DNA of 63,363 nt, counting the filler, from Octopus bimaculoides (Eukaryota): assembly GCF_001194135.2 (NCBI RefSeq). It is 5 parts of 3 records of this genome, joined end to end, with 100 filler letters (N's around TTAATTAATTAA, not from the genome) between each part and the next. Parts side by side here need not be neighbours in the genome. Positions count along the whole stretch, not along the records: positions 43,949 to 58,161 come from NC_068982.1; 4 more parts are not named here. One strand, written 5' to 3'. Positions 52,066-52,701 of this stretch are shown one piece after another; positions within the stretch are counted from its first letter, which is position 1, and every line of letters starts with the position of its first letter. Made by a program: the position numbers and the translations under genes. Below the pieces are notes generated by a model, which was given only the letters and a program-made list of their open reading frames with translations, did no database searches and was not told the origin of the DNA.

Positions 52066-52701
52066 TCAGAAGAATTTCAAGAAATTACCACGTGAAAATG
52101 GTGGGGCATAATCTGTATTATCGAATTGATCACAAGGAACAATCCTATCAAAATGTGTTCCTTCTGTATGACATAATAGTATATATGATTTGTCATTTTT
52201 CGGAGACTTCGTGGGTTTAAAATGATACCATTGGTATTTTTTGTTTATAACAGGCGTAAAAAGGTAAATAGTTTCCCCTGTAAATTGAGCAGCTGCAAAT
52301 ACCTCCGCAGTAGTAGCCCAAACTTTGTTCATACGCATTTTATCTACATGTTCTTCTATACTTTCATTATCGTCTAAAAACTTTATGTAATGTAGAGGCT
52401 TCGTTTCTATTAGATCGACTATTTTGTTCCTGTAGGATACATGATGTTTTTCAGCTCCTGATATTTCTTTACTCAGAGCTCTAAAAAAACAATTGCCATC
52501 TCCCGATATAAAGTCGATTCGACGTTCAATTTTAGCTAAAATACGTTCCAGCTGGATGTAAGATTTATCCCTTGGTGGGATTCGAATTTTTGAGGAATTA
52601 TGTGATGAACCAGACGAGTTTTCTGATGCCCGCCCAATTGAACTGGAACGGTGTCTTCTTTTTGTGGGTATGTCGCATTTAGTAGCCTCTCTTCGTTTCA
52701 T
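52066..52701 (-). CDS. Intronless OTU-family cysteine protease / putative deubiquitinase (211 aa)
   Basis: Uninterrupted ATG-to-TGA ORF. It has the OTU motifs GDGNC (Cys71), W-x4-E (WATTAE) and HFD (His183/Asp185), plus a basic, Ser-rich N-terminus (KRREA, TKRRHR). Confidence 0.85.
   Translation of the reverse strand: MKRREATKCDIPTKRRHRSSSIGRASENSSGSSHNSSKIRIPPRDKSYIQLERILAKIERRIDFISGDGNCFFRALSKEISGAEKHHVSYRNKIVDLIETKPLHYIKFLDDNESIEEHVDKMRMNKVWATTAEVFAAAQFTGETIYLFTPVINKKYQWYHFKPTKSPKNDKSYILLCHTEGTHFDRIVPCDQFDNTDYAPPFSRGNFLKFF

What the first reader, a model, noticed from the sequence alone, without database searches (positions are those of the whole stretch)
52066..52701. Intact, intronless OTU protease gene in a transposon graveyard
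Seen: every TE ORF around it carries stops or frameshifts, but this 211-aa ORF is open from ATG to TGA. It keeps the OTU catalytic Cys (GDGNC) and His-x-Asp (HFD), and has a basic NLS-like, Ser-rich N-terminus. Known: host OTU deubiquitinases are usually multi-exon, while intronless OTU domains are typical cargo of Helitron/Helentron elements, some non-LTR elements and viruses. Inference: this is either a domesticated or retroposed nuclear deubiquitinase, or the passenger gene of an unrecognised mobile element. No helicase, RT or transposase of such an element is visible next to it.
Basis: partly seen in the sequence, partly recalled or inferred. Interest (0 to 1): 0.75.

Follow-up and report, generated by a model that had tools for sequence, protein, structure and literature searches.

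The report
Conserved octopus OTU deubiquitinase host gene
The open reading frame is a real, already annotated Octopus bimaculoides gene for a small OTU-type deubiquitinase that has stayed at the same chromosomal position, beside a paralogue, since before octopuses and argonauts split, so it is an ordinary host gene and not transposon cargo or a young pseudogene.

Summary
Window 52066-52701 on the minus strand is an intact 211-aa ORF with an OTU domain (Pfam PF02338, 33.5 bits against a cut-off of 23.3). The residues D68, C71, H183 and D185 are invariant in 14 cephalopod homologues, and the predicted fold is closest to human OTUD3, OTUD1 and OTUD5.

The mobile-element reading is not supported.
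- The window is Octopus bimaculoides chromosome CM046602.1, and the protein is already in NCBI, UniRef and EukProt.
- 211-aa orthologues exist in O. sinensis, O. vulgaris, another Octopus species and Argonauta hians, one locus per genome.
- dN/dS is 0.05-0.09 and there are no indels.
- In O. bimaculoides, O. sinensis and A. hians the gene lies head-to-head with a 229-234-aa paralogue, 5.6-16 kb away.
- About 7 kb around it is collinear with O. sinensis and O. vulgaris.
- The flanking inverted repeat is two separate insertions of one dispersed repeat.
- No Rep, helicase, RT or transposase lies next to it.

The single-exon OTU domain is shared by the whole mollusc family (Haliotis; Dreissena has one 5' intron). 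An ancient transfer between host genes and transposons cannot be excluded: Gypsy-, non-LTR- and DDE-linked OTUs interleave with this family in a weakly resolved tree.

One side finding is a 114-bp non-coding block upstream of the ATG that is 90% conserved.

The parts
52066..52701 (-). Complete single-exon CDS of a 211-aa OTU-family cysteine protease, a predicted deubiquitinase. This is paralogue 'A' of a cephalopod A/B pair.
   Evidence: ORF. Pfam OTU 33.5 bits. Orthologues of the same length in 4 other species, dN/dS 0.05-0.09. Already in NCBI, UniRef and EukProt as P0258.
52129..52566 (-). OTU catalytic domain, aa 46-191 of the protein, with D68, C71, H183 and D185.
   Evidence: AF2 model well ordered over about aa 45-200. 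Foldseek to OTUD3 4bou: E 1.8e-12, target TM-score 0.88. Invariant residues. Alignment to the Crimean-Congo virus OTU protease through THFD.
52567..52701 (-). Disordered basic and Ser-rich N-terminal region (aa 1-45) with the bipartite-NLS-like KRREATKCDIPTKRR. It is conserved in A-type orthologues only.
   Evidence: pLDDT below 50 for aa 1-39. Pattern and composition. Conserved in A. hians, absent from paralogues B, C and D.
52834..52947 (-). Conserved non-coding block 133-246 nt upstream of the ATG, probably promoter-proximal or 5'UTR. It contains a conserved GTRAGT at 52916-52921.
   Evidence: 90% identical between Octopus and Argonauta, against 55% for the rest of the upstream region and saturated synonymous sites. 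No Rfam match and no folding signal.
52998..53033 (-). Two conserved TGACGT motifs (53028-53033 and 52998-53003) upstream of the conserved block. They are candidate CRE/bZIP-type promoter sites.
   Evidence: Invariant in all five species aligned. The function is inferred, not tested.
51815..52071 (.). Minisatellite of 36-nt units, about 7 copies, abutting and overlapping the stop codon (probable 3'UTR). It is specific to Octopus.
   Evidence: TRF and repeat finder. Present in the SRR11869390 species, absent in A. hians. Folds somewhat better than shuffles, z = -2.66.
49873..50115 (.). Left copy of a dispersed repeat of about 245 nt. It is not an element terminus.
   Evidence: 77% identical to the inverted copy at 54499-54741. 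It lies inside the block collinear with O. sinensis and O. vulgaris. A third copy is at 48421-48646.
54499..54741 (.). Right, inverted copy of the same dispersed repeat. It is missing at the orthologous site in O. sinensis and O. vulgaris.
   Evidence: In L012 and L013 it matches only the orthologue of the left copy, at 76%. The collinear blocks stop at 54451 and resume at 54740.

Best explanation
This is a resident, vertically inherited host gene of Octopus bimaculoides on chromosome CM046602.1. It encodes a minimal OTU-family cysteine isopeptidase.

Shown:
- an intact ORF
- an OTU domain and predicted OTU fold
- the complete catalytic set: Cys71 in GDGNC, His183 and Asp185 in HFD, plus Asp68
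- same-length orthologues in O. sinensis, O. vulgaris, a further Octopus species and Argonauta hians
- strong purifying selection
- a conserved head-to-head arrangement with a 229-234-aa paralogue (LOC106872854 in O. bimaculoides)
- a conserved upstream non-coding block

Inferred:
- The protein removes ubiquitin, or a ubiquitin-like modifier, from substrates by the usual OTU thiol-protease mechanism. Cys71 would be the nucleophile, activated by His183, which Asp185 orients.
- The disordered basic N-terminus with a bipartite-NLS-like motif takes it to the nucleus.
- The conserved block with its two TGACGT motifs is its promoter or 5'UTR.

The A and B genes arose by a local inverted duplication before the Octopus-Argonauta split. 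They belong to a cephalopod-specific clade of a mollusc-wide family of OTU proteins whose OTU domain lies in one exon.
For: ORF and domain:
- ORF. Pfam OTU above the gathering score.
- PDB sequence hits to OTUD3 (E 5e-8) and to nairovirus OTUs aligned through THFD.
- AF2 pLDDT 73, pTM 0.71. Foldseek best hits are OTUD3, OTUD1 and OTUD5. Viral libraries match more weakly.
- Invariant D68, C71, H183 and D185.

Identity of the window:
- L006 positions 1-1463 are 100% identical to window 56699-58161.
- The protein is held by NCBI, UniRef and EukProt on the 192,492,730-bp chromosome.

Orthologues: XP_029652787.1 (O. sinensis), CAI9717700.1 (O. vulgaris), P0001 (Logan) and P0002 (A. hians).

Selection:
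- dN/dS is 0.073 against the SRR11869390 species (Nd 6, Sd 20, Fisher p = 7e-10), 0.092 against O. sinensis and about 0.05 against A. hians. All CDS are 636 nt.
- dS (0.166) is about the level of flank divergence (83-86% identity) and equals dS of paralogue B (0.165).

Synteny:
- The A(-)/B(+) divergent pair is 14.0 kb apart in O. bimaculoides, 16.2 kb in O. sinensis and 5.6 kb in A. hians.
- Window 49478-56616 is collinear with O. sinensis and O. vulgaris at 88-92% identity.
- In the tree the cephalopod clade and the A and B subclades each have 100% bootstrap, and A and B follow the species tree.

Copy number: 1 contig per genome for each paralogue.
Against: - No expression data could be consulted. 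The Logan contigs look genomic, since they run about 1 kb upstream to a microsatellite.
- Catalytic activity, substrate (ubiquitin or a ubiquitin-like modifier) and localisation are untested.
- The NLS-like motif is a pattern match in a disordered region.
- The structure model rests on a shallow alignment of 14 sequences, and four of the five models had pLDDT below 60.
- Copy number was judged from protein collections, not from a whole-genome TBLASTN, so unannotated decayed copies elsewhere in the genome cannot be ruled out.
Confidence: 0.88

Rival explanations
1. Ancient domestication or host-transposon exchange. The cephalopod A/B clade, or the whole mollusc family, descends from an OTU domain once carried by a transposon or virus. 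It became fixed as a host gene before the Octopus-Argonauta split. Alternatively, transposons captured the host gene.
For: - Related OTU domains sit inside a Gypsy-type pol (P0054: RT, RNase H, OTU, integrase) and a Helitron protein (P0081).
- Others are joined to a non-LTR endonuclease domain (P0215, cluster of 269 members) or to a DDE transposase domain (P0231).
- These score better against the window protein (E 1e-21 to 1e-17) than human OTUD3 does (E 5e-8).
- In the NJ tree of OTU cores, the Gypsy-linked group joins the non-cephalopod mollusc genes (81% bootstrap). An exclusive cephalopod + mollusc clade is recovered in only 5% of replicates.
- The OTU domain is uninterrupted by introns across the family.
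- Transposon-borne OTUs are documented in Helentrons and Helitrons (PMC4067079, PMC9741609).
Against: - Of the 105 best representative hits, only 4 carry any transposon domain.
- The nearest non-cephalopod relatives are stand-alone genes at one locus per genome in gastropods and bivalves.
- The deep tree is a distance tree on 158 columns with weak deep support.
- The direction of transfer cannot be read from it.
- The human comparison is confounded by phylogenetic distance.
Confidence: 0.2
2. Cargo of a currently or recently mobile element. The element would be bounded, for example, by the inverted repeats at 49873-50115 and 54499-54741.
For: - A 77%-identical inverted repeat of about 245 nt flanks the ORF at about 2 kb on each side.
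- The neighbourhood is rich in repeats.
- OTU domains are known transposon cargo (PMC4067079, PMC9741609).
Against: - The right arm is absent at the orthologous site in O. sinensis and O. vulgaris, while the left arm and the gene are present.
- A third copy of the repeat lies outside, at 48421-48646.
- Neither arm is found in the A. hians locus.
- There is one locus per genome, with conserved synteny across Octopus and Argonauta.
- dN/dS is 0.05-0.09.
- Helitron, Gypsy, non-LTR and DDE proteins that bear related OTUs match only the OTU ORF in the window and in four related 20-kb loci.
- The Penelope-like ORF fragments 5.6 kb away are absent from the O. sinensis and O. vulgaris loci.
Confidence: 0.02
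3. Young retrocopy or pseudogene that merely happens still to be open.
For: It has a single coding exon and repeat-rich surroundings.
Against: - The ORF is kept at exactly 211 codons in five species, with synonymous sites saturated between Octopus and Argonauta while amino-acid identity is 87%.
- The excess of synonymous over non-synonymous change is highly significant (Fisher p = 7e-10 to 6e-43).
- No poly(A) tract follows the stop; a minisatellite does.
- The bivalve relative keeps the OTU domain in one exon behind a 5' intron, so a single-exon OTU is the family norm.
Confidence: 0.01

Closest known systems
Human OTUD3 / OTUD1 / OTUD5 (DUBA) catalytic domains (PDB 4bou, 4bop, 3tmp)
   Same: Same fold (Foldseek E 1.8e-12 to 3e-10; target TM-score up to 0.88). 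Same Asp-Gly-x-Cys and His-x-Asp catalytic arrangement. OTUD3 is the best sequence hit in the PDB.
   Different: About 20% identity. The sequence match to OTUD3 covers only aa 58-139 (36 bits). Pfam detects no UBA, UIM or other accessory domain. The protein is only 211 aa, with a short disordered basic N-terminus. It belongs to a mollusc-specific clade, so it is not an OTUD3 orthologue despite the database name 'OTUD3-like'.
Paralogue B: O. bimaculoides LOC106872854 (XP_014775476.1), O. sinensis XP_036356695.1, A. hians GAB1598621.1
   Same: Same family, and a single-exon CDS. It is the head-to-head neighbour 5.6-16 kb away in three species. The same catalytic residues are present.
   Different: 46-52% identity. 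Its N-terminus is different (MIPSIISGCP...) and lacks the KRR...KRRHR motif. Constraint is weaker (dN/dS 0.19-0.27 against 0.05-0.09).
Stand-alone mollusc OTU proteins (e.g. Haliotis rubra LOC124285213, Patella caerulea SNE40_016785, Dreissena polymorpha LOC127867825, Mya arenaria 'OTUD4-like')
   Same: 34-40% identity over the whole OTU core, including the C-terminal tail. One locus per genome. The OTU domain lies in a single exon.
   Different: They are 300-550 aa long, with an N-terminal extension that has no Pfam domain. The cephalopod proteins lack that extension.
Transposon-borne OTU domains (Helentron/Helitron OTU, PMC4067079 and PMC9741609; here P0081 Helitron, P0054 Gypsy pol, P0215 non-LTR)
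   Same: Same domain with the catalytic residues kept. 31-37% identity to the window protein over the OTU core.
   Different: Those are embedded in, or fused to, Rep/helicase, RT/integrase or endonuclease proteins. At least one of them, the non-LTR-linked P0215, is multi-copy (cluster of 269 members). The window gene has no such neighbour, is single-locus and is syntenic across genera.
Nairovirus L-protein OTU proteases (e.g. Crimean-Congo virus, PDB 3prm/3phw)
   Same: Alignable over aa 66-195, including GDGNCF and THFD. Same fold.
   Different: E is only 3e-4 by sequence. Viral libraries give weaker structural matches than cellular OTUDs. There is no viral context.

Membership tests
OTU cysteine-protease superfamily (Pfam PF02338) | Profile match above the curated gathering score | tested here: met
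   33.5 bits against a cut-off of 23.3, aa 67-148.
OTU cysteine-protease superfamily (Pfam PF02338) | Catalytic Cys at the start of a helix, preceded by a conserved Asp (D-G-x-C) | tested here: met
   G67-D68-G69-N70-C71. D68 and C71 are invariant in 14 homologues. The helix starts at residue 71 in the model. The motif aligns with GDGNC of OTUD3 and of the viral OTU proteases.
OTU cysteine-protease superfamily (Pfam PF02338) | Catalytic His with an acidic third residue (H-x-D/N) on a C-terminal strand | tested here: met
   H183-F-D185 are invariant, lie on strand 183-189 and align with THFD of the Crimean-Congo virus OTU protease.
OTU cysteine-protease superfamily (Pfam PF02338) | OTU alpha/beta fold | tested here: met
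   This rests on a predicted model only. Foldseek to 4bou gives E 1.8e-12 and target TM-score 0.88, and 103 PDB hits at E <= 0.001; all 50 listed are OTU domains.
OTU cysteine-protease superfamily (Pfam PF02338) | Isopeptidase activity on ubiquitin or a ubiquitin-like modifier | not testable with these tools
   This needs the recombinant protein and activity probes.
OTUD3 orthologue (as some database names imply) | Full-length similarity and domain architecture of OTUD3. From general knowledge, that is an OTU domain plus a C-terminal ubiquitin-binding region. | tested here: not met
   The match covers only aa 58-139 (36 bits). There is no second Pfam domain. The closest relatives are mollusc-specific proteins at E 1e-33, not OTUD3.
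Helitron/Helentron (or other transposon) OTU cargo | Rep/helicase, RT, integrase or transposase in the same ORF or element | tested here: not met
   TBLASTN with 11 large multi-domain proteins that carry a related OTU (4 of them with recognised transposon domains: Helitron P0081, Gypsy P0054, non-LTR P0215, DDE P0231) hits only the OTU ORF in the window and in L001, L006, L012 and L013.
Helitron/Helentron (or other transposon) OTU cargo | Multiple genomic copies with shared termini | tested here: not met
   There is 1 contig per genome for A and for B. The inverted-repeat arms were inserted independently. A whole-genome TBLASTN was not possible.
Processed retrogene | Poly(A) remnant, target-site duplication and an intron-bearing parent gene | tested here: inconclusive
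   No poly(A) tract follows the stop. Relatives also have a single-exon OTU. An event this old would have lost its marks.

The most novel reading that the evidence does not exclude
The cephalopod A/B OTU pair is an anciently domesticated transposon-derived deubiquitinase. Its OTU core is as close to Gypsy-, non-LTR- and DDE-linked OTUs as to other mollusc host genes. The A copy would have gained a nuclear role and would be driven by an unusually conserved promoter-proximal element: 114 bp that are 90% identical between Octopus and Argonauta, where synonymous sites are saturated.
Probability: 0.15. Interest if true: 0.45.

Novelty: already known. Interest (0 to 1): 0.15.

Why it matters
It matters little beyond annotation. 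The gene is already a predicted protein in public records for four species, and it behaves as an ordinary, strongly constrained host gene.

Three points have modest value.
- It corrects the idea that an intronless OTU ORF in repeat-rich DNA signals a hidden mobile element.
- It defines a cephalopod-specific pair of small OTU deubiquitinases, linked head-to-head and with different levels of constraint. The database names for them ('OTUD3-like', 'OTU7-like', 'OTUD4-like') are misleading.
- It points to a short, deeply conserved upstream non-coding block that could serve as a handle on cephalopod cis-regulation.

The deep relationship of this mollusc OTU family to transposon-borne OTUs is the only part with wider evolutionary interest.

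Tried and rejected
- Inverted repeats as element ends: rejected. The right arm is absent at the orthologous site in O. sinensis and O. vulgaris, and a third copy lies outside.
- Upstream conserved block as a structured or known RNA: no Rfam match. Fold z-scores are -1.3 and -1.9 in Octopus and about 0 in Argonauta. The antisense 78-aa ORF at 52721-52957 is hit by a 1-bp indel in a sister species, and tblastx conservation is the same in all frames. I therefore read it as non-coding.
- Synteny with the thymidine-phosphorylase-like gene that follows the A. hians orthologue: not found within the window or within 10 kb in O. sinensis.
- Viral origin: the BFVD matches (iridovirus, baculovirus VP80, nairovirus) are weaker than the cellular OTUDs.
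- NCBIfam: no hit.
The Penelope-like call for 45002-46458 therefore rests on motifs seen by eye.
- Literature search for the locus names and SRA runs: nothing found.
- My early note that the protein was unannotated was wrong. I corrected it after the exact look-up.
- Patella P0013 could not be looked up.
- The species behind SRR118693xx and ERZ21867824 could not be identified.

Full report
**Observation.** The piece 43949-58161 contains a 636-nt ORF at 52066-52701 on the minus strand, ATG to TGA, 211 aa. An in-frame TAA lies 12 nt upstream of the ATG and is conserved in related species, so the coding sequence is complete within one exon. At 35% GC, a given run of 211 open codons has a probability of about 1.7e-7.

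Pfam OTU (PF02338) matches at 33.5 bits against a gathering score of 23.3. NCBIfam gives nothing, as expected for a eukaryotic gene. The best solved-structure sequence match is human OTUD3 (4bou, E 5e-8). The nairovirus L-protein OTU domains align over aa 66-195, matching GDGNCF and THFD. This places Cys71, His183 and Asp185 on the viral catalytic triad.

**Where the window comes from.** A locus fetched for a paralogue (L006, Octopus bimaculoides GCA_001194135.2, CM046602.1:66007537-66028241) is 100% identical over its first 1463 bases to window 56699-58161. The window is therefore O. bimaculoides. By extrapolation the ORF lies near 66.003 Mb of that chromosome.

An exact look-up shows that the 211-aa protein is already in NCBI, UniRef, nr, EukProt and MetaClust, on a single contig of 192,492,730 bp. 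The tool masks its name. My earlier impression that it was unannotated was wrong.

**Orthologues and selection.** Proteins of exactly 211 aa occur in four other sources:
- O. sinensis (XP_029652787.1, 'OVARIAN TUMOR DOMAIN-containing deubiquitinating enzyme 7-like')
- O. vulgaris (CAI9717700.1)
- a further Octopus species, from SRA runs SRR11869385/90
- Argonauta hians ('OTU domain-containing protein 3-like')

They are 98%, 98%, 98% and 87% identical to the window protein. All five CDS are 636 nt without indels.

Nei-Gojobori estimates of dN/dS:

| Comparison | dN/dS | Note |
|---|---|---|
| O. bimaculoides vs SRR11869390 species | 0.073 | Nd 6, Sd 20, Fisher p = 7e-10 |
| O. bimaculoides vs O. 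sinensis / O. vulgaris | 0.092 | |
| O. bimaculoides vs A. hians | about 0.05 | synonymous sites saturated, pS 0.67 |

dS to the SRR11869390 species (0.166) is about the level of divergence of the non-coding flanks (83-86% identity). It equals dS of the neighbouring paralogue (0.165). This is the signature of a constrained orthologous gene, not of a decaying copy.

**Genomic stability.** In O. bimaculoides the paralogue LOC106872854 (XP_014775476.1, 234 aa, single-exon CDS) lies on the opposite strand, with its ATG about 14.0 kb from the ATG of the window gene, head-to-head. The same divergent pair is found in two other genomes:
- O. sinensis: A at 134,901,756-134,902,391 (-), B at 134,918,633-134,919,334 (+), 16.2 kb apart
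- A. hians: 5.6 kb apart

Window 49478-56616 is collinear with the O. sinensis and O. vulgaris loci at 88-92% identity. A distance tree gives 100% bootstrap to a cephalopod clade and to subclades A and B, each following the species tree. Two further subclades, C and D, come from an unidentified assembly (ERZ21867824) and from Logan runs. Each paralogue is on one contig per genome. Paralogue B is less constrained, with dN/dS 0.19-0.27.

**Test of the mobile-element reading.** An inverted repeat of about 245 nt flanks the gene (49873-50115 and 54499-54741, 77% identical). The evidence against these being element ends:
- The left copy lies inside the block shared with O. sinensis and O. vulgaris. 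The right copy has no counterpart at the orthologous site and only matches the orthologue of the left copy.
- A third copy lies at 48421-48646.
- Neither arm is in the A. hians locus.

They are therefore separate insertions of one dispersed repeat.

I also ran TBLASTN with eleven large proteins that carry related OTU domains; four of them have recognised transposon domains (Helitron P0081, Gypsy pol P0054, non-LTR-linked P0215, DDE-linked P0231). They hit only the OTU ORF in the window and in four related 20-kb loci. Their Rep, helicase, RT, integrase and endonuclease parts match nothing. The RT-like and GIY-YIG-like ORF fragments at 45002-46458 are absent from the O. sinensis and O. vulgaris loci.

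**Is lack of introns unusual here?** No. The Haliotis rubra homologue (411 aa) is a single-exon CDS. The Dreissena homologue has one intron after codon 47 and carries the whole OTU domain in its second exon. All octopod models are single-exon. A single-exon OTU domain is a family trait.

**Structure and mechanism.** AlphaFold2 on a 14-sequence alignment gives pLDDT 73 and pTM 0.71. Residues 1-39 and 203-211 are disordered and the core is confident. Four of the five models were poorer, so this is supportive rather than strong evidence.

Foldseek against the PDB returns OTUD3 (E 1.8e-12, target TM-score 0.88), OTUD1 and OTUD5/DUBA, followed by nairovirus OTUs. The viral library gives weaker hits. 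D68, C71, H183 and D185 are invariant in 14 cephalopod sequences.

I infer a conventional OTU thiol isopeptidase acting on ubiquitin or a ubiquitin-like modifier. The conserved basic N-terminus of the A type suggests it is nuclear. Neither activity nor localisation was or could be tested here.

**Deep ancestry.**
- The exhaustive representative search finds 2579 relatives at E <= 1e-3 and 7 at E <= 1e-30.
- The nearest non-cephalopod relatives are stand-alone 300-550-aa proteins of gastropods and bivalves, one locus per genome.
- Of the 105 best representatives, only 4 carry transposon domains.
- In an NJ tree of OTU cores, however, a Gypsy-embedded OTU and a set of proteins of about 1000 aa group with the non-cephalopod mollusc genes (81% bootstrap). 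An exclusive cephalopod + mollusc clade appears in only 5% of replicates.

Transposon-borne OTUs are documented for Helentrons and Helitrons (PMC4067079, PMC9741609). An ancient exchange between host genes and transposons, in either direction, is therefore not excluded. It is also not shown.

**Side finding.** A 114-nt non-coding block (52834-52947, 133-246 nt upstream of the ATG) is 90% identical between Octopus and Argonauta and nearly invariant among four Octopus species. The rest of the upstream region is 55% identical, and synonymous sites are saturated.

Just upstream of it lie two invariant TGACGT motifs. Inside it is a GTRAGT that stays a consensus 5' splice site in A. hians (GTAAGT to GTGAGT). 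There is no Rfam match and no folding signal. It is most simply a promoter or 5'UTR element. Whether a 5'UTR intron exists needs transcript data.

**Verdict.** It is an already annotated but uncharacterised host gene, one of a conserved cephalopod pair. Interest is low.

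Noticed in passing
window 52834-52947, with 52998-53003 and 53028-53033: A 114-nt non-coding block upstream of the OTU ATG is 90% identical between Octopus and Argonauta although synonymous sites are saturated. Two invariant TGACGT motifs lie just upstream of it, and it contains a conserved GTRAGT at 52916-52921. There is no Rfam hit and no RNA-fold signal.
   Followed up: partly
window 51815-52071: A minisatellite of 36-nt units, about 7 copies, abuts the stop codon. 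Each unit can form a small hairpin (fold z = -2.66). It is shared with the close Octopus relative checked (SRR11869390 species) but not with A. hians.
   Followed up: partly
window 48421-48646, 49873-50115, 54499-54741: Three copies of a dispersed repeat of about 245 nt, probably SINE- or MITE-like. The copy at 54499-54741 is missing at the orthologous site in O. sinensis and O. vulgaris.
   Followed up: yes
window 45002-46458 (-): Two adjacent ORFs in different frames (134 aa and 351 aa) carry a YRDD reverse-transcriptase-like motif and a GIY-YIG-like motif with a Cys-rich tail. This suggests a broken Penelope-like retroelement, with at least one frame break between the two parts. Pfam does not confirm it, and it is absent from the O. 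sinensis and O. vulgaris loci.
   Followed up: partly
window 46916-47262 (+): An ORF with a weak integrase zinc-binding (H2C2) match (E 0.01, below Pfam's cut-off) runs into the assembly gap at 47263-47911. It may be a fragment of an LTR-retroelement pol.
   Followed up: no
window 47263-47911 and 48788-49404: Two runs of N (649 and 617 bases) are scaffold gaps, so long 'ORFs' of X across them are artefacts. Microsatellites flank them, and others lie at 50189-50293 ((AC)n) and 53679-53741 ((ACAT)n). The sub-threshold Rfam mir-297 and mir-3149 hits fall on such low-complexity DNA.
   Followed up: yes
window 56617-56826 and 56698-57519 (+): A repeat of about 210 nt has a 76%-identical copy at a non-orthologous place in the O. 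sinensis and O. vulgaris loci. It overlaps a comparatively GC-rich (0.46) 273-aa ORF with no Pfam match, which has a diverged copy in L006 at about 4870-5196. This is probably another unclassified repeat.
   Followed up: no
L006 10001-10705 (+), equivalent to about 14 kb beyond window position 52701: Paralogue B (LOC106872854, 234 aa OTU) lies head-to-head with the window gene. A mariner-like transposase remnant sits 2 kb downstream of it, at L006 12661-13188 (-).
   Followed up: partly
L004 and L005 (ENA ERZ21867824 contigs): An unidentified assembly carries two further cephalopod-clade OTU paralogues (238 aa and 217 aa) on different contigs. Together they are sister to the A type in the tree (70% bootstrap).
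   Followed up: no
P0054 (ENA contig, 2112 aa): A Gypsy-type pol has an OTU domain inserted between RNase H and integrase. Several proteins of about 1000-1150 aa with a C-terminal OTU, of which the two scanned with Pfam show no other domain, cluster with it (97% bootstrap). Their nature is unknown.
   Followed up: no
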